The notes under the pieces are model-generated. The model made no database searches and had not been told where the DNA came from. It was given only the letters and a program-made list of their open reading frames with translations. From positions 15,004,001 to 15,068,000 of the forward strand of contig JBHGNT010000003.1 in assembly GCA_043228905.1 (NCBI GenBank): a stretch of DNA of 64,000 nt. The letters are read 5' to 3'. The stretch comes from Azolla caroliniana (lineage: Eukaryota > Plantae > Polypodiophyta). This document shows, one piece after another, positions 10,141 through 56,700 of the stretch; position 1 is the first letter of the stretch; the number at the start of each line of letters is the position of its first letter. A program made the translations under genes and the position numbers.

Positions 10141-12505
10141 CTATAGCAGCTTCAACTCTTGCACCTTGCCATAGTGCTTCCTGGACTTATTCTAAGAGAA
10201 ATGGAACTTTGAATGTCTGCTAACATTGCAAACGGTACTGAGCTTTAATAATATGCACGCTGATGGAGAGAGTTGTGGCATTGTATTCTTCGATTAGTTT
10301 CCTCATAGTTTCAACCTTCTTCACTGTTGAAGGTAACGACTCAATCTTTTCTTTGTGCAAGTAGATTGCCTCTTCTTCCCATCCAAATACATGTTCTTAG
10401 AATGCTCTTTGTGTAGAAGTCCTTTATACAAGGAACAAAATTAGGGCCCATTACACGAGCCTTCTAACTAGTAGACACCTTTTCCAGAAAACAGAGGGCC
10501 AAAAGCAAAGAAAATCAACCCTTATCAGAGCAAGAATCATTTTAGAGACATAGAGCATAAGGGGACCATGAGGATCACAATAATTTCTTCCCCCCAATTT
10601 CCTTCTTCTCTTCTTTCAATAGACTCTCATTCTTTCATCCGTTTCTAATTTTTGAAGCCAGAAAAAGGAAGTGTTATACATGTACCCCCGATACATGCTA
10701 AGTGTGAAAAGGCCAAAATTGGTCTTCCACTTAGTAGTGTGTGGGGAGAGAGAGAGTTTAGTGAGTGTGAGCGAGTGAGTGAGAGTCTTCATCCTCTCTG
10801 TCCTCCCTCCCCCCCCCCCCCCCCCCCCTTTCTCTCTGTTGCAGAGATTCACTACCTCTTCCTCTCTGTTGTAACCTCTAACCTCCTATTGTATTGAGAG
10901 TTGTCTATTGTATCCTACTGTTGCTCGCCCCCTGTTCCTGCCGTGCACACTACAACTAAGAAGGAGCACCGCTCCTTCTTCATCCTTGTTGTCCTTGCAT
11001 CACGATTCGGAGCAGAACAGAACAATTCCCTCTTGGTTTTCTACTCCACCGATTTGCAACAGTGGTATCAGAGCTTGGGAGACAACGATAGGAAGCTTTG
11101 GAGTTGGAAGCAATGAGCATCCAAGACTCGTAGCAGCAGTGTGGGAGATTCGTGTGGTGAGCGTTGGAGTATTGGGCTTGGCTGAAGCATCTACCTATTG
11201 TTGGGCATCTCCAACATCTTTGACATTGAAGAAAGGAGCCTGCTATTCACAGGTATTTCCCTTGGTTAAACTCTCCGTTTATCCATCATAAGCGAAACCT
11301 TTTTTGGTGGAAATAAGTTGTGGTGGGAGAGACCCCTGCCACATTTGGAAGAGCGATTTGGGCTCAGTGTGAATGTATAGCAGAGCAGATGCCTACAATT
11401 TGTGATTTTGGAGATGTATGCTAGTCAGTATCGTTGTCACATTTGGAAGAGAGATTTGGGGTCAATGTGAATGTATAACAAAGAAAATGCCTACAATTGT
11501 GATTTGGGAGATGTATGCTAGTCAGTATCGTTGACATTTTGGAAATTATATGTTTTTCAGTGGTGCGTGTTATATGCAAGAGTGACATTAGTCTTTTTTG
11601 ATAGTTTGTAGCTGACCTTTTGGAAGTTGTATGCTTTCAGTGGTGCGTGCTACACACAATATTGTTGGAAGTTATATGCTTTCAGTGGTGCGTGCTACAC
11701 GCAATATTGGTATCAATTTTTGACAGTTTGCCATAAGCTAGTTAGTTACTAGTTTTTTTGTTGTCCAATCGTATTTTTTTGTTGCCTGATACTTGTGAAA
11801 CTGTTTTTAGAATTCAAGCCATTGGACACTAAAAGAATATAAGGTATGGAGGATTCACATTTGGAGGACAAGGACATGAACTAACATCTCGTGGATAAGT
11901 CCAAATAAAAGCAATAAAGATGGAGAAAAGTTAAAAAGAGAAAAAGCAGACCACCAAAACGCAGTCAGAAACAAATGCTCATAACTCTCTCGTTTGACAC
12001 CCAAATATCACGTGTAAATATGGGTTAGAAAGCTTATGACGAGAGCTATCCCTAGCTTTTTAAAAAATCTAAATTTGGAGCATGGATGAGGGAGATATGA
12101 CGATTAGAAGATCGTTGTGTCATAGCCAAGAATAGGAGATGGAAAAGCTCTAAAAAAAGCGTGGAAAAGAAAGCAAGCGAAACTTATCTACTAGAGGAGA
12201 ATTTCATATAAAGCAAGAAGGGTGAGGTGGTGAGAAGGAGTTTTTTTTCTTGTGGTGTTTTTCTTGCCTATTCATGTAGTGCGTTTTTCTAGTGATCAAT
12301 TGATCCTTGTAGGCTTGAGTTCATGTATCTTCTTTCTCTTGTTTCTATGATCATCACTCCTTATTAATATATCTTTGTAGATTTGGATTTCTATATCTTC
12401 CTTCTCTCTCTTTTCTATCATCATCTCTCTTTTCATTTTTTTTGCGCTCCAGGGAGGGCCGATCTTTTCCGTACCTTGGGAAGATTGATTGTGTCTTAGT
12501 ATTAC

Positions 12506-17704: not shown

Positions 17705-18693
17705 ATAAGTGTGAAAATACTCTTCTTTTTTTGGCAAGGAGAAGAATAAATACGTGTAATTGCCATTTTATTTTATTTTGTATTAGGAGTGTGAGGTTTT
17801 TCCTACCGACTAGCGGGGGTTTTACTCACATCATTTGTTTTTATTTATTTATTTATTATCTCCTTCTTTGTCTATAGCCATGAATAAGGCGAAGGAGAAC
17901 CTTTAGTTTTATTAGTAGCTTAGGGTTCACCATAAATGGTTCACCAAGAAGCAAGGGGGAGGGCTAAATGTGAAACTGTTTTTAGAATTCAAGCCATTGG
18001 ACACTAAAAGAATATAAGGTATGGAGGATTCACATTTGGAGGACAAGGACATGAACTAACATCTCGTGGATAAGTCCAAATAAAAGCAATAAAGATGGAG
18101 AAAAGTTAAAAAGAGAAAAAGCAGACCACCAAAACGCAGTCAGAAACAAATGCTCATAACTCTCTCGTTTGACACCCAAATATCACGTGTAAATATGGGT
18201 TAGAAAGCTTATGACGAGAGCTATCCCTAGCTTTTTAAAAAATCTAAATTTGGAGCATGGATGAGGGAGATATGACGATTAGAAGATCGTTGTGTCATAG
18301 CCAAGAATAGGAGATGGAAAAGCTCTAAAAAAAGCGTGGAAAAGAAAGCAAGCGAAACTTATCTACTAGAGGAGAATTTCATATAAAGCAAGAAGGGTGA
18401 GGTGGTGAGAAGGAGTTTTTTTTCTTGTGGTGTTTTTCTTGCCTATTCATGTAGTGCGTTTTTCTAGTGATCAATTGATCCTTGTAGGCTTGAGTTCATG
18501 TATCTTCTTTCTCTTGTTTCTATGATCATCACTCCTTATTAATATATCTTTGTAGATTTGGATTTCTATATCTTCCTTCTCTCTCTTTTCTATCATCATC
18601 TCTCTTTTCAATACTGTTGTTCACTCCCATGTAGTCTGAAATGTTGGTCGCACTTCTGTTGGTCGCAATAGTTCAAGTAAGAACTATTCATTT

Positions 18694-21452: not shown

Positions 21453-24325
21453 CATGCAATGTAACAGTTTATTCTGAATAGTTACAATACAATAGAGGCA
21501 ATGGCTCTCTCACAATAGCAACAACCACAAACTAGGTTACAGAGCCCATTATGTACTAATTGGGCTAGGGCAACTGCCCTTTGATATATTTACAGAATTG
21601 TTCGAAATCTAATTCGTCCAAGGTACAATGTGAATATGGCCATTATAGACCAGTATTCGACACACCCTTGTAATAGGCGTATACAACGGAAATCTGTAAT
21701 AAAGAGAGCAAGTAGACAATTCAAATTTTTACAAGGTAGCCAAACAAATCAGATTTCTATTCGAGTCGGCAAATTCCAAAAAACAGGAGGCCAAATCGGT
21801 CGGGGTCGGAGGAGTTGAGACCGAACTGCGAACTATTGATGATGATTGTTTGAAACCATCTCGAGTGTCTGACTCAATTAGATTGATTCTTCATTATACC
21901 CATCTAGTGCCGAAGGGATCTGAATCGATCTGCAGAAAGACACTTGGACATCCCATCTGCGACATTATCGGCTATAGGTATCTTCTCGAGGCCGATTTTC
22001 CCTGAAATGACGTAGTCTCGAACAAAGTGATATCGATAGGCTTAGAGGTGTTGTGATGAACCGGGTTTTTCAATAGAGCAACAACACCTTGATTGTCATT
22101 GCAGACAACTAGAGCCGAGTCGAAGTCGACTTGTTGAAACATGTGCGTTAGCCGACTGAGCCAGAAGGCCTCTTTTGCCATATCGGACGCGACTACTTAT
22201 TTGACCTCGGTCGTTGATGTGGAAGTGCACTCCTATAGTTTTGATTTCCACGAAATTGCTCCATTGCTGAATTTGAAGTAGTATCTAGTTGTTGATTTTC
22301 GGTTGTCCACACATCCAGCAAAATCTGAATCAATGTAACTGACTACACCTGAGTTTTTGTTCGGACTTAAGCGAATACCAAGGTCTTGTGTGACCACTAG
22401 ATATCTAAACACATGCTTTACTGCGTTCCAATGCGATCGGTCAGGGTTGTGCATGAATTTGCTTACGAATCCAATGGCATGAGCAATATCAGGCCGTCTC
22501 GCAACCATCACGTACATCAAGGAGCCGATTGCCAGTGCATATCTTCCCCCTCTGAATTGGATGTCGAACGGGGAGCGGGGTCGAAGTAGATTTGGCCGAT
22601 TGCATGTTGAAGTGCTCTAAGACACGCCTGATGTAGTCGGCTTGAGACAACAATAGTTGTCGTCCATTTCGGAGCCGACTAATCTTTATACCAAGAATGT
22701 GTCGAGCATGATCTAGGTCCCTCATTGTGAACTTCAACCGCAGTTGCCGACCAAGATCAGCAAGTTCTCCAACATGCCTGCCAGATAGTAGCATGTCATC
22801 CACATATAAGATGAGGAAGATGGGTTACTCGTTTTGAGCTGTTTTCGTGAAAAGACAGTGGTCCTCATAGCTCTTAGAGAAGCTGATTGATTGGATAAAA
22901 TCGTCGAACTTGTTATACCATTTCCACGGTGCCTATTTAAGGCTGTAAAGAGTCTTCCTGAGTCGACAGACTAGATGCTCTTGGATGGCTGCAATGAAGC
23001 CTTTCGGTTGCTCCATGTAAAATTCCTCCTCTAGGTCACCATGGAGGAAGGTCATCTTCACATCTAATTGAATAAGCTCCAAATCCTTGGCTGCCACTAC
23101 GCCGAGGAGAAATCAAAGGATGGTCATTTTCACCACTGGTGAAAACATTTCGTCGATGTTGATGCCATATTCCTGTTGGAAACCCTTCGCTACTAGTCTA
23201 GCCTTGAATTTTGAGGTGGTCGAATCAGACGTTTCTTTTAATCTGTAGATCCACTTGCAAGGAATAGCATACAATTGATTTTTTGGTAGTTTGACCAAAT
23301 CCCAAGGTTTATTTGCCCGAATGGAGTTCATTTCCGACTCCATTGCCAAATGCCATGTGGCCGAATTGGCTGATGTCGATGCTTCTTCATATGACGTCGG
23401 TTCACCGGCATTTGTAAAGAAGATTCCAGGAGAGTACCCCTCCGGGGGTTGCGAGAGTCTCTCAGATCTTTGAGGTATGACTAGACTAGTCGCATTTGGT
23501 CCAAAGAAGAATGTTCACCTTTACTAAGTCGGTGCTAGAGGTTTCGGCTACCTGTGAAGCCGACCTTGTGTTATGAACTAGGCCTTCATGAAGTGTTGGT
23601 ATGTGTAAGAAAACTACCCTTTGGACTTCAATAGGCCTTTTGGCCGTTTTATGCTTAGCCAACTCATTGAACACTACATCTGAACTTCAGACGATCTGTT
23701 TGTGCTCGGAGTCCCAGAGTCGGTATCCGAACTCGCCGTCGGGTCCATAGCCAAGGAAAATACAATTTGCAACGGCTCTAATTTGCAATGGTCGTCTTTC
23801 GGTATGAGGGCGTATGCCTCGCATCCAAAAATCCTTAGCTTATCGTAATTCGGCTTTTTGCCGATCGATAATTCCTGAGGTACTTGAAGTCCTAGAGGCC
23901 TACTTGGCGACATAATTATGTGTACTGCCGTAAGTAGGGCCTCCGCCCAGAAGCCATCCGACAGTCCGGAGTATTGGAGCATGGATACTATCCGTTCTTG
24001 AATTGTCCGATTCATGCACTTGGCAATTCCGTTCAGCTCCGAACTATAGGGTGCCATGTATTCACGTCGAATGCCATGCATTCGACAAAATTTGATGAAT
24101 TCTTCAGACTTGAACTCTACCCCGTTGTCAGTTCGAAGGCATTTCAACTTTCAACCAGATTGGTTCTCTACAATGGCAAGCCATTCCTGGAAGATCAAGA
24201 ACACTCGATCTTTGGTTCTCGGATAAGCCCACACCTTCCGAGTCGATTCATCAATGAAATTGACGAAGTACAAGGCAATGCTGAAAGACTAATGTGGCTT
24301 AGGACTGCAAAGATCCGAGTGAACC

Positions 24326-27300
24326 TGTAAAGAATCGATGGTGATTCTTGTGCAGCGGAATAGATTAGAGATATGTGTTGTGAGTGTGTATATGAGAGAG
24401 AGAGAGAGAGAGAGAGAAACACAAGAGAGATAGATTTTTGAAAAACAATAGAATACTCAAGACGATGTATATTACAAAGGAGATTAACTGAACTAATTAC
24501 AAAGTAGGAGGAGAGTGCTTTATATAGTCACTCTCTCTCTTCATTAACTACCGAAGCTCATGGGTCATGGGGAATGTGAAAACTCATTATTTATGTGTCA
24601 TAGAATCATATTCTATGACACATAGTTAATGTGTAGATAAGAGTGGTGACTTTTGACCTTTGAGTGCACACTCTCAAGGGTGTGTTCACACACTAGGCTA
24701 GGTTGAGCTTGATTCTCAACACGCCCCCTCAAGCTCAACTTTGGTCAGTTACTTCGGTCGATGTCCGCTTCAGCTTGTATTCGGTTCGGACGGTATCCGG
24801 TTCGTTCTCGCTTGTACTCCCCCCTCAAGCTTGGCAAGTCAGGGACCGTCAATCCAAGGTTTGACAGGAATTGCTGAAGCTTGTCAGCTCCTAGAGCTTC
24901 GGTGAAGATGTCAGTTGTCTGAAGATTCGTAGTGATATGTTGAAGGTCGACATTGCCAGCTTGAACACGCTCTCGAATGAAGTGATAGTGCACTTCAATA
25001 TGCTTCGTCCATGCGTGGGAAACCGGGTTCCGAGCCAGATAAATACTGCTCATGTTGTCGCAGTAAAGGGGAATTGGATCTTTGATGGGAATGCCCAAAT
25101 CCGTCAATATCCTCTTAAGCCATATGACTTCCCGTGTAGCCACCGTCGAGCCCCTGTATTCGGCCTCTGTGCTCGAAAGAGCGACTGTTGGTTGCTTCTT
25201 GCTACTCCAGGATGGCTCCACTTCCGAGGGAGAAGACGAAACCAGAGGTTGATCGTCGGTCGGCTTTGTAGCCTGCCCACTCGGCATCTATGTACCCCTC
25301 GAGTTGAATTGGCGTGGCCGACTTATAGAGAATGCCATAGTCCATCATTCTGCTCACATATCGTAGCACTCTCTTAGCACAATCCAAATGGATATCTCGT
25401 GGCGTTTGCATGAACTGGCTAAGAAGGCCGACCGGATAGGTCTGGTCTGGTTGAGTGATCATGAGGTAGATAAGACTATCGATCAGTTGTCAATACTGAG
25501 TCGGCTCACACTCTGTGGTGCCAGAATTGGCATCTACTTTGAGGTTTCGGTCGAGAGGTGTTGCCACAGACTTGCACTCAGTCATCCCGAACTTGTATAA
25601 CAAGTTGAGAAGGTAGTGCTGTTGGGTGATCATAATCCTGGCTGGAGTCCGAATTACCTCGATGCCAAGGAAGTAGTGGAGCTCTTTCATGTTCGTCATC
25701 TCGAATTCGTTGGAAAGGAGGGATTTGACCTTGTTGATGTCGACTAGATGGTCATCTCCAATGACCAGATCATCTATGTACGGGTTGATGACGATCAGAC
25801 TTTCGGAATCGCTTCTTACATAGAGAGAATTGTCCGAATTTGACATTCGGAAGCCGATTCGATAAAGATATTGTGTTATCTTCGAGTGCCAAGCATGTGG
25901 TTCTTGCTTAAGACCATAGAGAGGCTTCTTGAGTCGGCAGATGGCTTTTGGATGAATGTTGGATTCGAAGCTGGGTGGTTGTACCATGTACACCTCCTCT
26001 TCTAATTCGCCTTGAAGAAAAGCGTTCTTGAGATCCATCTGGTGGAGGTGCCACCCTTTCACTGCTGCAAGCGCTATCATGGTTCACACGGTTGTCATCT
26101 TTGCCACTGGGGCAAAGGTCTCTTCATAGTCGACGCCCTGTGTTTGTGGGTAGCCCTTTGCTATGAGTCGAGCTTTGTAGCGATTGATGGAACCGTCAGA
26201 ATTATACTTCACTTTGTATATCCATCTACAACCGATTGCCTTCTTGTGCGGTGAGTGAGGGACGAGATCCCATGTCTCATTCTTGCTGAGAGATTGCATC
26301 TCCTCGTTCATTGCTTTGACCCATCGTAGATCTTTACCGGCTTCGGCAAAGCTCTCCGGTTCTCGAATTGTTGCCACCTTCATCATAAAGGCATAGTGGT
26401 ATGCCATATAGTCGTTGTAGCCGAATCGGCTAACTAGATTCTTCTCTCGGGTGGAGTGACGGAGTTTCTCATTTGCCGGTGTGAGTGCTTTCTCAACTCC
26501 GGGTGACCTCATAAGAGGCACATCAAAGCCTCATAAGAGTGAATGAGTCGATTCGTTGCTATCAAAGTGATCGTCTTCATATTCTGGCATTTTGGGCTTC
26601 CCTTTGTCCATCTTTGGACTTAGCCGAGATGAGTTTTGGTTGCTCGGAGGATGTTGTGGTCCGCGCAATCTGGTTGAGATCGGACTCTCTTCGAGTATTG
26701 ACCTTAGTTGATCATCGTCTTCAGTGTTGTCGAGGTCGTTTGTAGAGGGTTTGGGAGGAGTCGGCTCGGGTTTGTACCATGATGTCGATTTGTCAAAGAT
26801 GACATCCCGACTTACACGAGTCTTCCGAGTAGAAGGGTTGAAGCACTTGTACCCCTTTTGCTCTAGTGAGTACCCCACGAGGATGCATTTCTTTGATTTT
26901 GGGTCAAGCTTTTGCCGCTTCTCATTGGGAATGTGCACGTATACAATGGAGCCAAATATCCTTACATGGGATAGATCCGTCTTCTTCCCATAGTATTTCT
27001 CGTGCGTGGGGACCTCTTGCACTCCGGATGTTGTGCACCGGTTGATGAGGTAGACAACGGTATTTGTAGCCTCTACCCAATATGACTTAGGCATATGCTT
27101 CTCGTTGAGCATGGCCCGTGCTACCTCGAGGATGTGCCGATTCTTTCATTCGGCTACACCATTCTGTTGTGGTGTGTGTCCGCAAGTGAATTCTCGCCGA
27201 ATTCCTTCTTTTCGAAGATATGCAGTGAATGCATCGGAGAAGTATTCCTTTCCTTTGTCTAACCGAAGGCATCGTACATGACGCCCAGTTGTCTTTTCGA

Positions 27301-29088
27301 CTTCTCTTTTGAATTTTTGGAAGTGTGTAAACACTTCACTCTTCATCCTCATGAGGAAGATCTATGTGTATCTAGAGCAGTCATCGATGAAGGTAACATA
27401 GTACCGACATCCTCCGAACGTAGCCGTTTGTGCCGGTCCCCACACACCCGAGTGGACTACGTCCAATTGGCCTTTGCTCACGTTCCTCTCCTTCGGGAAC
27501 GGGTGCCGATGTTGCTTGCCGAATTGGCATGCTTCACATACTCCTTCAATCTCTTTCTCTTTGAAGGTCGGGAGCCCGATGACGACTCCTTTCGATTGCA
27601 TCTCCGTGAGTTTGTTGAGATTGATATGGACGATTCTTTTATGCCATAGCTCTATGTCGGTGTCGGATTTGAGGCCCTTTGTGTACATGGTCGATTTCCC
27701 CTCGTTTGACTCGAGGATAAACATTCTACCTTCCATTCGACCCCGAGTGATGAGTCGGCCTTCCTTCTCGAAGAAGCAACCACCTTGGTTGAATCGAACT
27801 TGCATCCCTTGCTCCACTATTTGGCCGACCAAGACCAAATTCTTCGTTATGGTGGGTACATGTAATACATTTTTTATGCAAGTTTGTTCGCCGTCTTCCC
27901 CAAATGGGACGTTGCCAATATGTCGAATAGGATGAGTGGTGTCATCTCCGGTCTCGACATAACCGGGTCGATCCAACTCTCGTAAGTCTCGGAACCATTC
28001 TTGACGGGACGTCATATGGTTCAAAGCACTGGAGTCGACGGACCATACATCTTCCGGATTTGAGGCATTAGTCGAAGTAGAGGCCGACATAGAATTTTCT
28101 CTATGTCTCATCACCAACATTCCTCCAAGGTCTTCATAATCAGAGTTGGTGGCGTAATTGGTGAGTTGTCGGCTTGTGGAAGCCGACTCACGCTTCTTCT
28201 TTCGGTGCTCTTCTTCATGGTGGCCAATTTTTTCCACAATCACCGCATTCGATCGCGTTTTGTCGACTCGAACCGGAATGGAAGCTCCCCCTTCTTCTGA
28301 AGGTTCCTCGATGGCTTCCGTCTTGTTGCCGAATTTGGGAGTTGTTGTCGTAAGTCGGACCTCGTCCGCTGCCTCTTCCTTGGCCGAATCGGCCTTTTGC
28401 TCGGCCGCGTCCTCTTCCTCCATTCGAATGCGTGTAGAGCATGTGGCCTTCTGAGGTGTTGCTCCTTGTTCGAACATGATTCTCTTCGACCAATAACATA
28501 GATTGAAGATCAAAGAAAGAGGGAGGATTCTCCCTTGCTAGGACGACGGTTCTCATTGAGCCGAACCGTGGTGCAAGGCCGTCGAGGCATATTTGCACCA
28601 TCTCATCATCATCCACATTGACGCTTATTGAGCCGAGCGAGTCACAAAGCTTCTTGATCCTCAAGGTGTAGCTTGTGATGGACATGTCCTGTTGTTGGAT
28701 GTTGTTCAACTCTTGGCGGAGTTGAAGCATCCTCGTGGTCGTGTTGGCGGCGAAAATCTTTTGTAGATTTTCCCACGCTTCCTTCGGCTTCTTCGCTTCT
28801 CGAATGTAATCGAGCATGTGGTCGTGAACACATGTTGTCAAGCAATACATTACTCGACTCGCCGCTTGCTCCCATGTTGAGTAGTTGGCGTCTTTTGGGT
28901 CGGGTCGATTTTCTTGTGCTCCCTAGATGTAACCCCAATAGCCTTGGCCGACAAGGTATTGGTGCATCTTGTACTCCCAAGATGCGAAGTTGTTTCGGTC
29001 CAACTTCTCGCTAGGGAGAGCGCTTCCCATTTGAGTATTCATGGTGTTTGACTTCTCGCTAGAGATATGTGTTGTGAGTGTGTGTGTG

Positions 29089-29123
<35 letters not shown>

Positions 29124-29407
29124 CAAGATAGATAGATTTTTGAAAAACAATAGAATACTCAAGACGATGTATATTACAAAGGAGATTAACCGAACTAATT
29201 ACAAAGTAGGAGGAGAGTGCTTTAAATATAGTCACTATCTCTCTTCATAGTCATGGGGAATGTGAAAACTCATTAGTTATGTGTCATAGAATATGATTCT
29301 ATGACACATAGTTAATGTGTAGCTAAGAGTGGTGACTTTTGACCTTTGAGTGCACACTCTCAAGGGTGTGTTCACACACTAGGCTAGGTTGAGCTTGTTT
29401 CTCAATA
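24326..29407 (-). mobile_element. Copia element E, nested in the B integrase; degenerate gag-pol; PBS deleted
   Basis: LTRs 24326-24721 and about 29060-29407. TSD GAACC/GGACC (1 mismatch) splits the host motif DLVHSD. gag KLDRNNFASW, RT HQMDLKNAFL, RH WSSKKQPTVALSS. Confidence 0.9.
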
Positions 29408-30007
29408 GGACCAAATCGAGTGGTCTCGATTTTGTCGGTGCCGCAGTCGGGTGCGATGCGGCTATCTGTTTGCCATTTTGCAATGCTCACAGAATTGATG
29501 ATCGGAGAAGGAGAGTTTGGGGATGTATTCGGATCTAGATATATGCGTAATGTTTGCCTTGTTGAGGTGTCCAAGGCGTCCGTGCCATAATGAGAACACA
29601 CGAATATCTACCAGGAACAAGTCACCCTCTCTAAGTATGACGTATAGCGGGTATAGTGAATGTAATTTCAGTCCTCGAGCAAGCAGGAGGTTCCCCCTCT
29701 GGAGTGTCCACCCTTTTGTCGAGAAGTTGGCATGGATGCCATCTTCTTCAAGGTGTGCGATTGAGATCAATGGTCTTTGTTACCGGCCGGCAAAGGAGTC
29801 CAGAGTGGGAAACAGAGAGCTAATTTAGTAGTAGGAATGTGGTTGTAATTAAGCTATGAGTGTGGACGGACGGACCGGAATCGGTATGCCGTTCCGGATC
29901 CGGACCGATCCCGAACAGGTGTGGATGGCACTGTTTTGTAATATAGACCGGAAACCTATTTAAAGGCCCGGATACAATGTAATAGTGAGCGGTTAATTAA
30001 TGAAAGC

Positions 30008-32392
30008 TTAAGTGTTGTTATATCTCTGTGTCAATTGCCGTTCTGTCTTATCTGCTGTCGTCTCCGTAGTGACTCGAAACAGCTCCGCATCCGGAAACTC
30101 ATCCGATACTTCGTCACCCGTCTCTCCGGACTCCAATCGGCTTAAGTAATCCGCTACGGCATGCTGTATACCGGGTCGGTGGAATATTTCAAACTCGAAC
30201 TCCTGTAACAGTAAGGTCCACCGGGCCAATTTGCCGGTGAGTGACGCCTTGGACACCAGGTAAAGGAGTGTTGAATGATCTACATGGAAGGAAAACTTCC
30301 TTCCCAATAAATAGTGCTGAAACTTTGTCACATTGTAGATCATTCCCAGAGCTTCCCGTTCCGTAGTAGAGTAGTTCCGTTCTGCTTGGGATAGCTTCCG
30401 GCTGGCATAGTACACTGGCCGGTACCACTTTGGTTCCGTAAGCTGCATCAGTACGCTTCCGATTGCGATGTCGGAGGCGTCCACGAACACGTGAAATTCT
30501 TTACTCCAATCCGGAGGTTGTACTACCGGTGCCTGCGACAATAGTACCTTGAGGGCCTTATACGCCCTATCCTCAGTATCGGTGCACTGGAATGGTGTCC
30601 GATGTACGACAGCATGTAACGGTGTAGCCAGGTCGGCCAAGTATCGGAGCATCCGGCTGTGCCACCGGATCTGGCCTAAGAACTGGCTCAATGCCTTTGC
30701 CGTTGCCAGCGCCGGTGCTTCTAATATAGCTTTCACTTTGTCCGGGTAGACTGCTATACCTTCCTGGCTTACGATATGTCCTAATAAAGTTCCATTGGAC
30801 ACGCCAAATACACACTTTGCCGGATTCAAGCTTAGCCGGTACGCTCTACACTTTTCTAGACAAAGACGGAGATGCTGAAAATGATCCTCCTCCCGGCTAT
30901 AGACGGCGAAATCGTCAAGGAAAACCTGCATAAAAGCCGGTATATATTCACCAAAGATTTCCATGGTGATTCTTTGAAACGTTGTCCGTGCTGTTTTGAG
31001 TCCGAACATCATCACCACGGCCACAAACACCCCCCATTCGGTGACGAATGCCGTTTTCTCTTGGTCGTTGGGGTGCATCCGGATCTGATTATATCCGCTG
31101 AATCCGTCTAGGAAGCTATAGACCTCATGGCCGGCGACGGCATCCAACACTCCATCTGTGAACGGAAGTGGAAACGCATCCGTTACCGTAGCCGCATTGA
31201 GTTTCCGGTAGTCCACGCAAACTCGAATTTTTCCGTTCTTCTTCGGTACGACTACGATCGGGCTCAGCCATGTCGCTTTCTTTACCGGACGGATAAAGCC
31301 AACTCTTAGCAGTTTGTCGATTTCTTCCTTGACCTTGGCAGCATAATTGGGATTCATTCGGTACCGTCTTTGTGCCACTGGTTTTGCGTCCTTACTCAAG
31401 TGCACTTGATGCTGGTATAACTGAGGGCCGAGTCCTCGCATGTCTTCGTATGACCAGGCGAATACGTCGCGAAATTCCGTGAGAAGTGTTATCATCGCTG
31501 TTTTGTCTCCGGACTTCATCTCCTTGGCGATGTGCACCGGTTTTGCTTCGTCCGTAGTGCCTAAATTCACCTCTTCCAATTGCGATGCTTTTACGCACTG
31601 TGAAACGGCCATTTCCCGTTCCAACGCTTCTTGCGCTTGCCGTAACTCCCGGATTGTGTCTTTATCCGGTTCTGCTTCCGCCTCTTCCGGTTGCGGTAAG
31701 TACGGTGCTACGGCTTCGGCAATGTCAATTTCGAAGAGGGGTATGATCTTCGGGTTTTCCTGCAGGTATTGAGCTTCTTCTTCGTCCGCTAACCCTTCGA
31801 GCATGTTGACGCATTCTGCATACAACGGTGTACATTCCTTGCCAGTACTCCTCCTTGGCTGTGTTGGTACCCGTACCTTGGCTTTTCCTCGCCGGAAGGT
31901 AATTATATTTTTCCGCCAATTCTGTTTGATATGTGCCGTTTTCAACCATGGCCGCCCCAGCAATAGTGGGTATGCGCCTTGTGCCTGTAATTGTAGTACT
32001 ATGGCCGAGATGTGAAATGTATGCCCGCCGACGGTGACTTCTAATTTCCGTATTAATCCTGTCGGCCGCACTGAGCTTGTATCGGCCATCCGCAACCAGA
32101 ACGGACACGGCTCCCACTCGTGGATTCCTAGTTCCTCACACGTCTGGAGGCTTATTACATTTACCCCAGAGCCTCCGTCTATAACTGTGTCGGGGAGTTC
32201 TTTCCCTTTTACAATGGTAGTGATTACCGAACTGCTGGTGTCTACCACTGTTGGTCCCTCCTCCGGATTCGAGAAGAGTACCGGTGCCGGTGATGGTTCT
32301 CCTGCCGTCATGGCCATCTTCAGTCCTTCTGTGAATCTAGGCACGAGTTGGAGGAGTCTTCCTAGTGGTAACGTAATCTGGCATTCTTGCAA
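30008..32392 (-). CDS. Element F PR-RT-RNase H ORF, truncated before integrase
   Basis: VIDGGSGVN, VDYRKLN, FLDGFSGYNQI, FLDD, VFVDASD, EREALG, VADYLSR. The last ~14 codons are read from the inverted LTR arm. Confidence 0.9.
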   Translation of the reverse strand: MQECQITLPLGRLLQLVPRFTEGLKMAMTAGEPSPAPVLFSNPEEGPTVVDTSSSVITTIVKGKELPDTVIDGGSGVNVISLQTCEELGIHEWEPCPFWLRMADTSSVRPTGLIRKLEVTVGGHTFHISAIVLQLQAQGAYPLLLGRPWLKTAHIKQNWRKNIITFRRGKAKVRVPTQPRRSTGKECTPLYAECVNMLEGLADEEEAQYLQENPKIIPLFEIDIAEAVAPYLPQPEEAEAEPDKDTIRELRQAQEALEREMAVSQCVKASQLEEVNLGTTDEAKPVHIAKEMKSGDKTAMITLLTEFRDVFAWSYEDMRGLGPQLYQHQVHLSKDAKPVAQRRYRMNPNYAAKVKEEIDKLLRVGFIRPVKKATWLSPIVVVPKKNGKIRVCVDYRKLNAATVTDAFPLPFTDGVLDAVAGHEVYSFLDGFSGYNQIRMHPNDQEKTAFVTEWGVFVAVVMMFGLKTARTTFQRITMEIFGEYIPAFMQVFLDDFAVYSREEDHFQHLRLCLEKCRAYRLSLNPAKCVFGVSNGTLLGHIVSQEGIAVYPDKVKAILEAPALATAKALSQFLGQIRWHSRMLRYLADLATPLHAVVHRTPFQCTDTEDRAYKALKVLLSQAPVVQPPDWSKEFHVFVDASDIAIGSVLMQLTEPKWYRPVYYASRKLSQAERNYSTTEREALGMIYNVTKFQHYLLGRKFSFHVDHSTLLYLVSKASLTGKLARWTLLLQEFEFEIFHRPGIQHAVADYLSRLESGETGDEVSDEFPDAELFRVTTETTADKTERQLTQRYNNT

Positions 32393-32399
32393 CGCCTGC

Positions 32400-34490
32400 C
32401 ATGTCTCGTTCTCGGAGTGACTACCGTCGGCAAGCCCTGCGGTGTTCTCCTTTTGCTGTTGTAAGTCTGTGACATTCTGCTCGTTTGCTTTCTTTACCCA
32501 TTCCGTTGCTTATTTGCGGATGGTCTCCTGTGTCTCCCATTCTTTGGCCATGCCCTTCGATCTTGTGGTCACCTGCTGCAGGTCTGCCACCTCAGGGACT
32601 ACCATATTTACCGTCGGTCGTTTTTCATAGCTCTTCACCGGGCATTGGTTACTATAATGGCCTTCCTGTCTACAGTAGTAGCAGTAGGCTTTCCGGGCAT
32701 TGCTAGATTCGGCATTGTCTATTGTACCCGGGGTAGGTCCTACGGTACGCGCGGGGTTTTGTACCGGTTGGCTACTTGGAGCGCCTTGTTCCGGATCCCG
32801 GGGGTAGCCGCCTTTTTTAAAATGCCGTTTTTTGTTAAAGTTCTTCTTATTACGGTACTCTTGACGGGGTTGCCCGTTATATCAGCCGTATTCCTCCCGT
32901 TGCTGACGATACCCGGGGGAGTGCTCCCGGTCGTACTGTTCGTATCGTCTATTGTAATCCTGGTGCCGATCATGCCGGTCATAGTTATCTCGTCGATCAC
33001 CGTACCAGACATCATTTTCCCGTCGCTCGCCGTACCGGACATTATTTTCCCGTCGCTCGCCATACCGGACATCATTTTCCCGTCGCTCACCATACCAGAC
33101 ATCCTGTGCCGGTCGGTCACGGTCCATTCGCCGCCAGCGTTCGTCTTCTTCATCCCGGGTGCTGCGTGGCTCAATTTGTTGGACGGGCAGTGCTTGCCGA
33201 GTCAACAGATTATACTCGCACCTATCCGTCGTATGGCTCTTGGACTGACAGATTACACATTGCGTCCTCATAGTGCATTCTAGAGCCGAGTGTCCGGAAT
33301 TCAAGCAGGTTGTGCACTGTATTGCTTGCCGAAACCGGAGGTCTTCATCGGACGGTAACGCCCGTTGAAGTGCGCCCAGTGTGAGCCAGGAGCTTGTCTT
33401 TTCCATCTCTTTCACCCGGTCAATGACCTGGTCGATTGTACTTGTACGGAAATCGATTACCGTGCAAACCGTGCGTAGGGGTTCCCGAGCGCGTTTAGGA
33501 ATATCGTCCGTAATTCCTCCTCCGGGGGTGCACGGGTAAGCTGACTATGCATTCGTTGAAACCGGATGACAAATTGGGGAATGCTCTCCCCTGCCTCTTG
33601 CCGGATAGTATAAAATAAGCCTACCATTACGGTCTAGTCCACCTCATTTTGAAAGAAATGCATGAATTTAGCTTTTAAATCTGCAAAGGTGTTGATGGTA
33701 GATGGGTCCTGCGTCCGGCGCCATCTTGCTGCCGGTCCCTCCAATGTGACGCCAAACTCTGCTATCTTAGAGCGTTCTTCTTCCTCCGGTGTCAGTCGTT
33801 GAGACACATGGTTGGCTTCCCATGTCTGTTCAAATGCGTGCACATGAGCTTCTGCGTCCGGATCATCTCTATACTTAGAGTACTGGAACGGCATGTCGTC
33901 GTCCAGTATCGGTGCGCGGGCTGGTAGTGTTGGTGCTCGTTCCGGAATTTTCTCCGGTGTTAGTGGTCTTTCCCGATTTGATTCCGGTGTCGGTTGTTTC
34001 TCTTCCGCTGGTGATGGAGGCCTCTCCTCCTCGACTTCCGATGTCGGAGGTCATTCTTCTTCTGCTGGTTCCGGGGGTTCCAGCGTTAGTACTTCCGGTT
34101 CCGGTTCCGGTGTCGGTAAGGTATCCGATCCTTCGTCCTCCAGTCCGCCCGGGGTTTCGTTGCTGCTACGGTAGTTCGTGTGCACGCTGTATTCCCCTTC
34201 GGAGTCCGATTCATATGCTGAAAAGGCCTCTGCTTCGCCTTCTCCGTTTGCCAACGCGTGGAGAAGGGATTCGGTTTCCCGGAGGCTGCTTAGGCTGTTG
34301 CCGTCGTCCGGGTGTGATGTTTGCTGTAACCAGTGGGAGTCCTCTGCTACTCTCCGGATTACGTTGGAAAACGAGCAATCCGCTCTAATTTCCTGCGCCG
34401 CTTGCTGGAAAGCCTCGCGTCTCCTTTGCCTTTCGGCAAGGCGTCGAGTTCGATCTGTAACCAGGTCGTGCGTTGATCTAGACATCCATC
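32400..34490 (-). pseudogene. Element F gag, with stops and frameshifts
   Basis: PDAEAHVHAFEQTW, TLEGPAARW; knuckles CTTCLNSGHSALEC and CVICQSKSHTTDRC. Confidence 0.8.
33001..33103. repeat. 30-bp tandem repeat (about 3.4 copies) in F gag
   Basis: Unit CGTACCAGACATCATTTTCCCGTCGCTCGC; encodes ERRENDVRYG on the minus strand. Confidence 0.9.
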
Positions 34491-35641
34491 CATGCCGTCG
34501 TTCGCTGCAAAAACAGGAATCGTGGTTGCCAAAAACTGTGTTAACTCTTTGGGCCGGACAATGGCCTAACACAGGGTGTCTACGGGAGACACTTCACCAA
34601 AGGGTGTTACGGCAACCGGATTAGACTTCAACGCTTAATCCGACTTAATCAAGTTACTTATTAGGATCGTCTTCATAACACGCGTAAGATATAACAATTA
34701 AGACAGAACGGAAATTGACACAGAGATATAACAACGCTTAAGCTTTCATTAATTAACCGCTCACTATTACATTGTATCCGGGCCTTTAAATAGGTTTCCG
34801 GTCTGTATTACAAAACGGTGCCATCCGCACCTGTTCGGGATCGGTCCGGATCCGGAACGGCATACCGATTCCGGTCCGTCCATCCACACTCATAGCTTAA
34901 TTACAACCACATTCCTACTACTAAATTAGCTCTCCATTTCCCACTCTGGACTCCTTTGCCGGCCGGTAACAGTCTTGAGAGCCCAGGAACATGCCGGACA
35001 TTGTGTAGTACTAGTGTAGAATTGCCTGGGAGATTGAGTTCTATAGTATTGATTGCAATGATAGTGCAATGTTGCGAATTTCCGATTCGTACTGAGTCGG
35101 AGTTTCAGGCTGAATATTGCCGAAACTGAGATCTGTGAGGGGTCACATGGTAGGACGCACCCGAATCCAAGAGCCACATGCTGGATTCCTCAGTCGTAAG
35201 CAGAACTTCTGATTCGACAGGGTTCTGAATGGATAGTATGTTTGGGTCATTAGACAATACTTCGGCTGAAGGGCCGACGTAATTGACCTACTCATGCAGG
35301 CCACTCTTTTGATCAGCTCGCTAAGCCTTATCATTCCTAGCTTTGAGTGCACGATAATTAGCTTTGATGTGCCCAGGTTTCTTGTAGTAGTTGCATATTT
35401 AGTTGTCCCAGGACTTGCTTCGTTGGATGTCGCCTGAGCCGAAATCGGGGAGATTAAACTTTCGTACTCGTTTAGGTGTGCCTGGACCGAGCCGGATTCC
35501 TTCATTCGAAGATTGTAAAGGCCCCGAATCAGATAGATCTTTGTGGCGGCTACCTTCTTCTCATAAGTGTCTGACAATGTCTTCCATAGTTGGAAGGTTG
35601 TCGAACATGATTACATTGTGAAGTACACTGATTCTGACAAG

Positions 35642-53701: not shown

Positions 53702-56700
53702 GTGCACGATCTTGCAAACTGTCATACGCAGGTATTCAACCCCAATCGAATGCTATTTGATCTTCCGCATTGACGGCCTTTGTCCCCAACATCTGGTATC
53801 AGAGCCTGCACAGTATTCGGTCCTTCAACCCGCTGTCGGCCGTCGTCTCAGCCTGCACAGCATTCGGTTTCCTGCGTCATTCGAAGAAGAGGGAAGAAGA
53901 AGAAAAAACGAGGCTTGCATCTCATCACGTTAGATCATCTTCGCTTGGAGTAAGCCAGCCGGTTGTACTCTGTTCCTTGTGATCGTAACCGCTCGAGGTG
54001 AAATCCCCTTGTGCAACATTGACACGATCGTGCTCCACTCGGTTAAACGGCATCCGAAGAGGTCATCAAACGCTGCTCGCCGCTCATTGTAACCACTCGG
54101 TGCAGATCGGTCTCAAGACAACAACCCCAATTCGTGCTTCATTCGGCTGATCGACATTCGGGAGGATCAGTTGGATCCGTCTCTCTCGTCGCTGCAGTCA
54201 CCCGAAGCAGAATCGGTCCAGACAATCGGTTTCAATAATCGGTATTTGGCATATATATTCGGAAGCGAACCGGGCTCACTCCGACTCGGCAACATTCGGG
54301 AAGACCAGTCGGTTCTGTCCCTCAAGTTACCGGAGTCAATTCGAGCAAGTTCAACAATACATATATCTGAAGCCGAACCGACTCGGGTTCAAATCCGACT
54401 AGAACGATATCGGGTGAGCCAACCGGCTGCACTCCAACAAGGTTCGTAGTCAACTCCGAACCGAGCTTCGTCAACCGAAACCAAATTTGATGGCATCAAC
54501 ATCCGGCTCGTCAGAAATGAGTCTACGAAAGTTCGATGGATCGAACTTCAACTTCTGGAAAGAGCAAATGCAGGACTATCTCATAGTCAAGGGGCAAATC
54601 GATCCCATCGAAAATGAAGAACCTCCAGAAGGATACAAACCAATTGAGTGGCAGAAGCTGGACAGAATCGTCCGCGCCACGATTCGGATGCACCTATCGG
54701 AATCGGTATACTTTACGGTGCAATCGTGTACGACAGCATTCGAACTGTGGAAAACACTGTCGGACACTTACGAAAAGAAGGTCGCCGCAACGAAGATGTT
54801 TCTGATCCGGCGCCTCTACAACTTGCGGATGAAAGAATCTGATTCGGTTCAAGCACATCTCAATGAGTACGAAAGCATAAGCTCCCAAATCTCATCTCAG
54901 GGGACGGCAATCGAGGATGAACTCAGAGCAATGATACTCATGAGCAGCCTTCCCTCATCATGGGAAACTTTCGTCACAACCGTGTGCAACGCGTCAACCA
55001 CGGCTGTTAAATACTCCGAAGTCACGAGCGCAATCCTGACCGAAGCAGCTCGGAGAAAGTCTTTCGCCAAAGACTCAACAGACGACGCTTACGTAGTACA
55101 AGGTTCGACTGACCGATCGAACATACGAGGAAGAGATTCCTCACGGCAGCCGAACAATCAGCGAAGACGGAGCCAGTCACGGGATAATCGAATCTGCAAC
55201 TATTGCAAGAAACCCGGACACATCAAAGCCGACTGCCGCGCACTCAAGAACAAGAACGACAAGTCTCAGAAATCAGACAAGAAGAGTGGCCGGCATGAGG
55301 AGATCAATTACGTCAGCTTCTCAGCTGATGTGCTACCAAACGACCCGAATATACTATCAATCGAAAATCCAGTCGGATCAGAAGTTCTGCTCACGACTGA
55401 AGAATCGAGCACATGGCTCTTAGATTCGGGCGCGTCATTTCACGTGACTCCTCATCGATCCCAATTTCAGCAATATACGATCCGTCACTCCGACTCAGTT
55501 CGAGTCGGCAACTCGCAACACTGTGACATCATTGGAATCGGCACAGTAGAGCTCAACCTTGCAGGTGGCTCTACACTTGTACTTCACAATGTCCGACATG
55601 TACCCGAGCTCTCAAGGCCATTGATCTCAGTCGGACAACTAGATGAAGACGGCATTCGTGCCGGTTTTTCTTCGGGAGGGTGGACACTCCACAGGGGGAA
55701 CCTCCTGCTTGCTAGAGGACCCAAGATACACTCACTGTATCCATTACATGTTACGCTCAGAGAGGGTAACCTGTTTTTGGTGGATATTCCTGTGTCATCA
55801 CTATGGCACAGAAGATTAGGACACCTCAGCAAGGCCGGCATTACGCACCTATCTAGAGCCGGATACATCCCTAAACTCTCCTTCTCGGACCCTCAATTCT
55901 GCGAACATTGCCAGTATGGCAAACAAGCAGCCGCATCACACCCGACATCAGCACCAAGAGAAACGAGACCTCTCGATTTAGTCCACTCGGACGTCTGTGG
56001 CCCAATGCCGCATCAGTCTCTCGGCGGTGCCTCTTACTTCGTCAGTTTTATTGACGATTCGACTCGAAAGGTGTGGGCTTATCCAATTCGCACCAAAGAT
56101 CGTGTCTTCTCGATCTTCTCCGATTGGCTCGCTATGGTAGAAAATCAAACTGACCGAAAACTGAAATGCCTTCGGACCGACAATGGGGGAGAGTTCAAAT
56201 CAGAAGAATTCGTCAAATTCTGCCGACAACGCGGCATCCGACGTGAATTTACGGCACCACACAGTCCGGAGCAAAACGGGATTGCAGAACGCATGAATCG
56301 GACAATCCAAGAACGGATAGTTTCCATGCTCCAACACTCCGGACTGTCGGATGGCTTCTGGGCAGAGGCTCTACTTACGGCAGTACACATAATCAATATG
56401 TCGCCAAGCAGACCTCTAGGACTTCAAATTCCTCAGGAACTATGGATCGGCAGTAAGCCGAATTACGACAAGCTGAGGATCTTCGGATGCGAGGCGTACG
56501 CCCTTATTCCGAAAGATGATCGCCGAAAACTTGCACCTCGGTCCAGGAAATGCATTTTCCTTGGATATGGATCAGACGGCGAAATGGGATACCGACTCTG
56601 GGACCCCGAACGCAGACAAATCGTTCGAAGTTCGGACGTTGTGTTCAACGAGTCGGCTATGAATCCATCAGTCGAAACACCGATCGAAGTCCGAAGGGTA

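What the first reader, a model, noticed from the sequence alone, without database searches (positions are those of the whole stretch)
29778..34971. Integrase-less Gypsy element with INVERTED LTR arms and a clean 5-bp TSD
Seen: the left 273 bp (TGTTACCGGCCGG...CTGTCTTA) is the reverse complement of the outer 273 bp of the 5' LTR, so both ends are the U3 end. Pol stops right after RNase H and is fused to the inverted arm; integrase, PPT and a direct 3' LTR are absent. GTCTT is duplicated on both sides and the host Copia is otherwise continuous, which implies a single integrase-type insertion. The arms differ at about 8 sites, mostly transitions, so they have aged in place. Known: LTR elements carry direct repeats; DIRS elements have inverted termini but use a tyrosine recombinase and leave no TSD. 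Inference: a PPT-primed plus-strand strong-stop DNA switched template after 273 nt and primed minus-strand synthesis inside pol, giving a cDNA with two U3 att ends that was integrated in trans. Both arms keep the TATA-like CCTATTTAAAGG and face inward, so the locus could make convergent or fold-back dsRNA and silence its own family, by analogy with Mu killer. If the same junction exists at other loci, this is a new non-autonomous, inverted-LTR retroelement type.
Basis: partly seen in the sequence, partly recalled or inferred. Interest (0 to 1): 0.88.

Follow-up and report, generated by a model that had tools for sequence, protein, structure and literature searches.

The report
Jumping gene inserted with two U3 ends
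A defective plant Gypsy-type jumping gene was inserted in one step with the same LTR end at both tips; it is most likely a mis-copied DNA intermediate, and a curiosity rather than a proven new element type.

Summary
Window 29778-34971 is a 5194-bp insertion into a Copia element. It is flanked by a true 5-bp duplication (GTCTT). A paralogous Copia in the same window and one public contig both show the uninterrupted site.

On the minus strand the insertion reads 5' LTR (about 367 bp), leader, broken gag, then protease-RT-RNase H in one open frame. In the RNase H-integrase linker, pol joins the inverted first 273 nt of the same LTR, with at most 1 nt of overlap. Integrase, the 3' untranslated end and a direct 3' LTR are missing. 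The arms differ at 8 of 273 sites: 7 transitions, 5 of them at CpG.

Best reading: a rearranged extrachromosomal cDNA with two U3 termini was inserted once by integrase. The rearrangement was a strand switch during plus-strand synthesis or end-joining of cDNA pieces. The integrase probably came from the parental particle.

I found no second copy of the junction, but the data that could show one were thin. Nothing shows propagation, and the structure argues against normal replication. The silencing idea is untested.

Unchecked notes from other windows of this genome describe at least five more insertions with two U3 ends. If real, this is one instance of a recurrent class.

The parts
29773..29777 (.). 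Left copy of the 5-bp target-site duplication, GTCTT
   Evidence: The paralogous Copia has one copy at this site.
29778..30050 (+). Inverted arm: LTR positions 1-273 (U3 start outward), read on the + strand. It carries the TATA-like motif at 29955-29966, facing inward.
   Evidence: It matches L001:746-540 in reverse.
30050..30051 (.). Internal junction between LTR position 273 and the RNase H-integrase linker of pol, with at most 1 nt (T) shared
   Evidence: five canonical relatives read GAT then GG.ACGGT, and this copy reads GAT then AAGACAG. One search places it between the RNase H and the integrase zinc-finger domains.
30008..32392 (-). Open frame of 794 aa: protease-like, RT, RNase H. Its last 14 codons and the stop lie inside the inverted arm.
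32393..34604 (-). Leader and gag region. It is split into several short frames and includes a 30-nt tandem repeat at 32945-33124. It is collinear with L001.
34605..34971 (-). 5' LTR, about 367 bp, with TGTTAC...GTAACA termini. The inner boundary is inferred. The outer 273 nt (34699-34971) form the right arm.
34972..34976 (.). Right copy of the target-site duplication, GTCTT
   Evidence: The X4 empty-site contig has 5 ambiguous letters at the join.
29465..29770 (-). Host Copia coding sequence (GAG-pre-integrase domain) that ends at the insertion site

Best explanation
This is a dead-on-arrival product of one retrotransposition cycle of an abundant Ty3/Gypsy family. Before integration, the linear cDNA was rearranged. 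Its right part (integrase region, 3' untranslated end, 3' LTR) was replaced by an inverted copy of the first 272-273 nt of the LTR. Both tips then carried the U3 terminus (TGTTAC...), which is the end made by plus-strand priming.

The most likely step is one inter-strand template switch during plus-strand DNA synthesis, a copy-back. Either a short plus strand of about 273 nt jumped onto plus-polarity pol sequence, or a growing plus strand at pol jumped onto plus-strand strong-stop DNA and ran off its 5' end. Less likely, two cDNA fragments were end-joined head to head.

The family's integrase, present in the same particle, then inserted this U3/U3 molecule into a Copia element and made a 5-bp duplication. 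The two LTR tips share the same 6 terminal bases, so both ends looked like valid substrates.

Shown: the structure, the junction, the single insertion and ageing in place. Inferred: which molecule switched, and the source of the integrase. The copy cannot replicate normally, because it has no direct 3' R for the first strand transfer, no plus-strand primer site and no integrase.
For: - **Exact element termini, 5-bp TSD and uninterrupted host.**. There is also an empty-site contig with 5 ambiguous letters at the join.
- **Both arms are the U3 end.** This follows from collinearity with L001.
- **The internal part is otherwise collinear with canonical relatives up to the junction.** Beyond it they continue into the integrase zinc finger and core.
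- **The junction has at most 1 nt of microhomology**. This is typical of non-homologous RT switching or end-joining.
- **The arms share T at LTR position 49**, where all laid family contigs read A at 29826. They are therefore sister copies from one source.
- **The arm differences are methyl-C-type transitions**. The whole copy shows an excess of C-to-T and G-to-A changes against family contigs: 97 such places against 40 in run X1. So the structure is old, not a fresh artefact.
- **Pre-integration rearranged LTR elements with TSDs are documented in tandem form** (PMC1950507; bioRxiv 10.1101/452573).
- **From my own knowledge, not tested here:** purified retroviral integrases carry out concerted integration of donors with two U3 ends in vitro.
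Against: - Only this one copy is available, so the step that made the junction is not observable.
- No bridging read or contig across 30050 was among the few pieces that read laying printed. Independent read support for the inner junction is therefore lacking.
- Position 273 has no demonstrated meaning. The U3/R/U5 limits are unknown, and there is no A-run at the junction.
- A replication-based rearrangement after a normal insertion could use the 6-bp TGTTAC identity of the two LTR tips and give the same sequence.
Confidence: 0.8

Rival explanations
1. Normal full-length insertion followed by a replication-based rearrangement (MMBIR/FoSTeS type). A nascent strand leaving the left flank switched at the 6-bp TGTTAC shared by both LTR tips onto the 5' LTR. 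It copied 273 nt in inverted orientation, then switched back into pol. This deleted integrase and the 3' LTR.
For: Both LTR tips begin with the same TGTTAC. The inner junction has at most 1 nt of overlap. The templated piece comes from 4.6 kb away in inverted orientation, which is a known signature of such events (my own knowledge).
Against: It requires one breakpoint to fall exactly on the element's last base next to the TSD, one position among thousands. The cDNA model gives that for free. Unchecked notes report several other two-U3 insertions with TSDs in this genome, which a random replication error would not produce repeatedly.
Confidence: 0.06
2. A propagating, non-autonomous inverted-LTR retroelement family. 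The same junction would exist at many loci, mobilised in trans.
For: The parent family is very abundant in runs of the same and a related species, with thousands of contigs laid. The protease-RT-RNase H frame is still open.
Against: No second junction was found. There were 0 hits in two metagenome scans. No protein in a 5.8-billion collection carries the junction-derived tail, and all 87 hits stop matching at or before the break or continue canonically. These searches barely sample this plant, so they are weak. Structurally, a transcript from the 5' LTR would end in antisense R-U3. It would lack a direct 3' R, a plus-strand primer site and a U5 end, so the standard replication scheme cannot regenerate the structure.
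Confidence: 0.05
3. Assembly artefact: a chimeric join at 30050 that put an inverted LTR piece next to pol.
For: The family is highly repeated, and no independent bridging read across 30050 was shown.
Against: An artefactual join would not end exactly at the LTR terminus, restore the host Copia and create a 5-bp duplication. The arms differ at 8 sites with a biological mutation pattern. Contigs of runs X1 (0 mismatches) and X5 (2 mismatches) run from the right flank 25 nt into the LTR end. That is under the tool's 31-nt bridging rule, so it is suggestive only.
Confidence: 0.03
4. Two independent insertions of the family in opposite orientation, joined by a later deletion, with GTCTT matching by chance.
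For: The family is abundant, and nested insertions are common in this window.
Against: The second element would have had to target exactly the first one's 5-bp duplication. The deletion would then have to remove everything between LTR position 273 and pol while leaving both outer ends intact. The host is continuous to the base.
Confidence: 0.01
5. The locus acts as a silencing trigger (Mu killer-like). Inward-facing LTR promoters, or read-through across the 273-bp arms, would give double-stranded RNA against the family.
For: Both arms keep the TATA-like motif and face inward. The arms could pair over 273 nt.
Against: There are no RNA data: no listed run holding the stretch is RNA. A transcript started in the 5' LTR would share only the short R part with the arm. 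The family is very abundant and probably already a small-RNA target, so one old copy adds little.
Confidence: 0.1

Closest known systems
Complex LTR-retrotransposon insertions made before integration (Sabot & Schulman 2007, PMC1950507; Zeng & Sun 2018, bioRxiv 10.1101/452573)
   Same: A rearranged cDNA of one family is inserted as a single unit with one TSD. The origin is attributed to aberrant template switching or recombination outside the chromosome.
   Different: Those are tandem LTR-internal-LTR-internal-LTR structures in direct orientation with normal U3 and U5 tips. Here the extra LTR piece is inverted, both tips are U3, and 1.4 kb or more of the 3' part plus the 3' LTR is lost.
Canonical Ty3/Gypsy elements of the same lineage (contigs L001, L007 from ENA metagenome assemblies; bryophyte- and fern-like relatives)
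   Same: Same LTR, leader, gag and protease-RT-RNase H. Nucleotide identity is about 76%, and the best protein hit, P0001, is 88% identical.
   Different: The relatives continue into the integrase zinc finger and core. This copy stops in the linker and ends in an inverted LTR arm.
DIRS retrotransposons
   Same: A retroelement with inverted terminal repeats.
   Different: DIRS elements use a tyrosine recombinase and leave no TSD. Here there is no recombinase domain, there is a 5-bp TSD, and the arms are a recent copy of a normal direct-type LTR.
L1 5' inversions by twin priming; copy-back defective genomes of RNA viruses (my own knowledge; twin priming is mentioned in bioRxiv 10.1101/2021.12.20.472354)
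   Same: The polymerase or primer switches strand polarity within one replication cycle. The result is a defective copy with an inverted segment.
   Different: The enzymes and the integration route differ (target-primed reverse transcription, or no integration at all). Those products have no LTR termini and no integrase TSD.
Mu killer (maize), an inverted partial duplication of MuDR
   Same: An inverted copy of a transposon terminal region that could give hairpin RNA.
   Different: Mu killer is a DNA-transposon derivative with demonstrated hairpin transcript and heritable silencing. Nothing of that kind is shown here.

Membership tests
Ty3/Gypsy LTR retrotransposon | Ty3-type RT and RNase H domains | tested here: met
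   RVT_1 9e-24, RT_RNaseH 2.3e-33, RT_RNaseH_2 4.5e-30
Ty3/Gypsy LTR retrotransposon | Pol order protease-RT-RNase H-integrase | tested here: not met
   No integrase in this copy. Relatives L001 and L007 have RT-RNase H-Integrase_H2C2-rve, so this is a truncated derivative.
Ty3/Gypsy LTR retrotransposon | Two LTRs in direct orientation | tested here: not met
   Only an inverted pair was found, 273 nt at 97%. There is no direct repeat of the LTR.
Ty3/Gypsy LTR retrotransposon | TG...CA termini and a short (4-6 bp) target-site duplication | tested here: met
   TGTTAC/GTAACA tips, and GTCTT on both sides with an empty-site paralog
Ty3/Gypsy LTR retrotransposon | tRNA primer-binding site after the 5' LTR and a purine tract before the 3' LTR | tested here: inconclusive
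   A leader of about 100 nt after GTAACA is conserved with L001 and starts TGG 5 nt after the LTR. I matched no tRNA to it, and it has no complementarity of 8 nt or more to the LTR. The PPT region is absent from this copy.
DIRS | Tyrosine recombinase gene | tested here: not met
   No such domain in any frame searched
DIRS | Insertion without a target-site duplication | tested here: not met
   A 5-bp TSD is present.
Pre-integration complex LTR insertions (Sabot & Schulman type) | A single TSD around a rearranged element of one family | tested here: met
Pre-integration complex LTR insertions (Sabot & Schulman type) | Tandem, direct arrangement sharing a middle LTR | tested here: not met
   The arrangement is inverted, with no third LTR.
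Mu killer-like silencing locus | Hairpin or antisense transcript and matching small RNAs | not testable with these tools
   No RNA run holds the stretch.

The most novel reading that the evidence does not exclude
This copy is one instance of a recurrent, so far undescribed class in this plant: integrase-inserted 'copy-back' cDNAs of LTR retrotransposons with two U3 ends. They would range from 0.1-kb hairpins to 5-kb elements, each with its own inner junction and its own 5-bp TSD. The class may be linked to the unusual plus-strand priming reported for Gypsy clades of this genome. Some members could act as hairpin or convergent-transcription sources of small RNA.
Probability: 0.3. Interest if true: 0.72.

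Novelty: new variant of a known kind. Interest (0 to 1): 0.5.

Why it matters
It is natural, in-genome evidence that an LTR-retrotransposon integrase can insert a donor with two U3 ends. It also shows that a reverse-transcription cycle can yield strand-inverted (copy-back) cDNA, not only the tandem complexes already described.

Such copies break the rule 'two direct LTRs' used by annotation tools. They are therefore missed or mis-split.

If the other two-U3 insertions noted in this genome are real, their junction positions would map where plus-strand synthesis goes wrong in vivo. They might also show how LTR ends become TIR-like hairpin elements. As a single old, defective copy, its biological effect is probably nil.

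Tried and rejected
- **Search for the junction elsewhere.** Exact 22-mer and a degenerate 21-mer across 30050 in JGI metagenome contigs gave 0 hits. A 75-aa query across the junction against 5.8 billion proteins gave 87 hits. None carries the junction-derived tail, and none exceeds 88% identity. The collections evidently hardly sample this species, so this is weak negative evidence.
- **Read laying.** Only short contigs of about 100-230 nt were available, and the output lists a small fraction of about 26,000 pieces. It gave the empty-site join and flank-to-LTR contigs but no verdict on 30050. One X6 contig (record 25) lies on 30043-30181 with 28 unmatched letters beyond. I read it as a canonical copy.
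- **Microhomology.** I looked for homology between the LTR at position 273 and canonical pol after the break. Only the single T is shared.
- **Is 273 a functional boundary?** The TATA-like motif lies at LTR 178-189 (TATTTAAA from 180). By eye there is an AATGAA-like signal about 40 nt before 273 and a U-rich YA site at 273. So 273 could be the R/U5 (poly(A)) boundary, but there is no A-run at the junction and no RNA data. This is left as speculation.
- **Recurring loose end at 34715 in the reads.** It proved to be a diverged LTR variant, not a boundary.
- **Tf1-like self-priming.** There is no complementarity of 8 nt or more between leader and LTR.
- **tRNA and Rfam scans.** Nothing was found.
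- **Relatives lacking integrase in their called protein (P0002, P0004, P0010).** In L005 and L007 a separately called integrase gene follows the query gene. In L006 the query gene runs to the contig end, so nothing can be said there. I ran no inverted-repeat scan on these contigs.
- **A 3' end of a close relative.** L007 runs into unrelated AT-rich DNA after pol. It is unresolved whether L001:1-460 is the element's own 3' end or flank.
- **Literature.** Searches for inverted-LTR integrase-type elements gave only DIRS papers and one passing remark on a guppy foamy-like provirus with an 'inverted LTR' (PMC5210030).
Full report
**What is there**

The window holds one long inverted repeat within 9 kb: 29778-30050 against 34699-34971, 273 nt, 97% complementary. 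Both outer ends read TGTTACCGG... going inward, and GTCTT lies directly outside each end. The flanks belong to a Copia element: the minus-strand ORF 29465-29770 that ends at the site has a GAG-pre-integrase domain.

A diverged paralog of that Copia lies at about 55140-55990 in the same window. It aligns to the left flank and then straight on to the right flank, with a single GCCTT where this locus has GTCTT twice. A contig of public run X4 joins 29772 to 34972, skipping 5199 nt with 5 letters that fit either side. This is what an empty site looks like. So 29778-34971 (5194 bp) is one insertion with a 5-bp target-site duplication.

**Anatomy, on the minus strand**

- **LTR.** It starts at 34971 and, judged by the TGTTAC/GTAACA termini and by alignment with the relative L001, ends at 34605 (about 367 bp). 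This inner boundary is inferred, because the copy has no direct 3' LTR to compare.
- **Leader.** A leader of about 100 nt follows. It is highly conserved with L001.
- **Gag.** The gag region is broken into short frames and contains a 30-nt tandem repeat.
- **Pol.** A single 794-aa frame carries protease-like, RVT_1 and RT_RNaseH domains.
- **Relatives.** The element is collinear with contigs L001, L002 and L007 from ENA metagenome assemblies. Nucleotide identity is about 76%, and the best protein hit, P0001, is 88% identical.
- **Where homology stops.** It stops at window 30050/30051. Five relatives read ...GAT then GG.ACGGT... and continue into the integrase zinc finger and core. This copy reads ...GAT then AAGACAG..., which is the reverse complement of LTR positions 273 downwards.
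- **Position of the break.** It lies in the RNase H-integrase linker. In L007 that is about residue 305 of the ORF, with RNase H ending at 256 and the zinc finger starting at 369.
- **Overlap and reading frame.** Only the T at 30050 could belong to either partner, so microhomology is at most 1 nt. The frame runs 14 codons into the arm and stops.
- **What is missing.** Integrase, the 3' untranslated end with any plus-strand primer site, U5 of a 3' LTR, and any direct LTR copy.

**Age and relatedness of the arms**

The arms differ at 8 of 273 sites, 7 of them transitions. Five transitions are CG to TG/CA and one is in CHG context; K2P distance is 0.030. Both arms carry T at LTR position 49, where all laid family contigs read A at 29826. 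They are therefore sister copies.

Against the family's contigs in four runs, the whole copy shows an excess of C-to-T and G-to-A changes: in X1, 97 places where the window has T or A for the family's C or G, against 40 the other way. The structure is old and has decayed in place. This, together with the exact termini and the TSD, makes an assembly artefact very unlikely.

Contigs of X1 (no mismatch) and X5 (another species label, 2 mismatches) run from the right flank 25 nt into the LTR end. This is under the tool's 31-nt rule for bridging, so it only suggests that the insertion exists in independent samples. No printed piece bridges 30050, so independent read support for the inner junction is still missing.

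**How it most likely arose**

In a normal linear cDNA, the U3 tip is the 5' end of the plus strand and the U5 tip is the 5' end of the minus strand. A duplex with U3 at both tips is one in which both strands begin as plus-strand-primed DNA. It needs a single switch from a minus-polarity to a plus-polarity template.

There are two versions of that switch. Or a plus strand that had reached pol may have jumped onto plus-strand strong-stop DNA at position 273 and run off its 5' end. Both give exactly this sequence. So would head-to-head end-joining of two cDNA fragments in the particle or nucleus.

The two LTR tips share the same 6 terminal bases, so integrase would see two valid ends. U3/U3 donors are known substrates for retroviral integrases in vitro (my own knowledge, not tested here). 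The parental RNA probably encoded integrase, so help 'in trans' is not needed.

I put 0.8 on 'pre-integration rearranged cDNA inserted once by integrase'. Within that, roughly two thirds goes to an RT strand switch and one third to end-joining.

**Rivals**

- **Replication-type rearrangement after a normal insertion.** It could use the 6-bp identity of the LTR tips. It must, however, place a breakpoint exactly on the element's last base (0.06).
- **Propagating family** (0.05). See the next section.
- **Misassembly** (0.03).
- **Two insertions plus a deletion** (0.01).

**Is it a family?**

I found no second copy of the junction. There were 0 hits in two metagenome scans. No protein with the junction-derived tail appeared among 87 hits to a 75-aa probe. 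There is no other inverted LTR pair in this window. These searches hardly sample this plant: the best hits are relatives at 76% nucleotide identity, so the negative result is weak.

The structure itself argues against normal replication. A transcript from the 5' LTR would end in antisense R-U3, with no direct R for the first strand transfer, no plus-strand primer site and no U5 end.

**Context from the scan's own notes (unchecked)**

Other windows of this genome carry first-reader notes of further insertions with two U3 ends and 5-bp TSDs:

- a 119-bp hairpin (s1-507412);
- a 230-bp fold-back (s1-508957);
- a 598-nt LTR fold-back joined at the primer site (s1-507437);
- a 3771-nt Gypsy (s1-507358);
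- a 5574-nt Gypsy with a tRNA-primer copy at the inner junction (s1-507370).

Followed-up notes describe Gypsy clades without a purine tract. I could not read those windows. If those insertions hold up as this one did, the phenomenon is recurrent with varied junctions. That would point to a repeated error of plus-strand synthesis rather than one propagating lineage. It changed my prior from 'isolated accident' to 'possibly one of a class'.

**Comparison with the known**

Tandem complex LTR elements with a single TSD, made by aberrant template switching or recombination before integration, are described for Triticeae, rice and maize (PMC1950507; bioRxiv 10.1101/452573). Neither paper mentions an inverted form. 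In the searchable library, 'inverted LTR' otherwise refers to DIRS elements, to juxtaposed separate copies, or to one passing remark on a guppy foamy-like provirus (PMC5210030).

This is not DIRS: it has no tyrosine recombinase and it has a TSD. L1 twin priming and copy-back defective viral genomes are analogies in logic only.

I rate this a new variant of a known kind: a pre-integration rearranged LTR-retrotransposon cDNA.

**The silencing idea**

Both arms keep the TATA-like motif and face inward, so convergent transcription or read-through hairpins are possible. No RNA run holds the locus. A transcript starting in the 5' LTR would share only the short R segment with the arm. I leave this at 0.1.

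**Limits**

- The organism is coded. The nearest named proteins are from liverworts and a fern at 41-48% identity.
- The U3/R/U5 limits, the primer-binding site's tRNA and the family's plus-strand primer are undetermined.

Noticed in passing
window 32945-33124: Five to six tandem 30-nt units (60-82% alike) inside the gag region of the element, on the coding strand. The blastn pieces against L001 also overlap here.
   Followed up: no
window 29862-29942 and 34807-34887 (LTR positions about 85-165): This U3 block is much better conserved with the 76%-identical relative L001 than the rest of U3. On the antisense strand it contains a B-box-like GTTCGGGATC. It may be the 'antisense tRNA-like Pol III module' noted for other LTR families of this genome (s1-504007). 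ARAGORN and Rfam found nothing.
   Followed up: partly
window 34500-34604; L001:830-960: About 100 nt after the LTR are about 93% conserved between elements that are otherwise 76% alike. The stretch includes a small hairpin (GTGTCT...AGACAC) and two TGG-starting candidates for a primer-binding site. I matched neither to a tRNA, and there is no Tf1-type complementarity to the LTR.
   Followed up: partly
L001:380-462: Directly upstream of L001's LTR there is no purine tract. About 40 nt upstream lies a stretch that looks complementary to a tRNA T-arm and acceptor end. It is unresolved whether this is the element's own 3' end or flanking DNA. It may relate to the PPT-less Gypsy clades noted elsewhere in this genome.
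   Followed up: partly
window 24379-29412: Another Copia on the minus strand (gag, beta-barrel, pre-integrase, SH3-like and RVT_2 domains). It has a 91-94% direct repeat pair at 24379-24726 and 29081-29412, and it lies right next to the host Copia fragment. The region is a nest of elements.
   Followed up: partly
window 21881-24324 versus 55981-58514: Long inverted matches at 75-86% between two Copia copies about 32 kb apart. The same pair provides the empty-site comparison.
   Followed up: partly
window 34947-35050 (runs X1 and X5): Contigs from two different species labels (organism A and organism B) carry the flank-to-LTR-end junction with 0 and 2 mismatches. The insertion may predate their split, or the labels may be close kin.
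   Followed up: no
window 11794-12093 / 17969-18268 and other pairs (50160/59753, 40779/47263, 53484/58714): Several direct LTR pairs at 98-100% identity. Much younger elements than the one studied sit in the same window.
   Followed up: no
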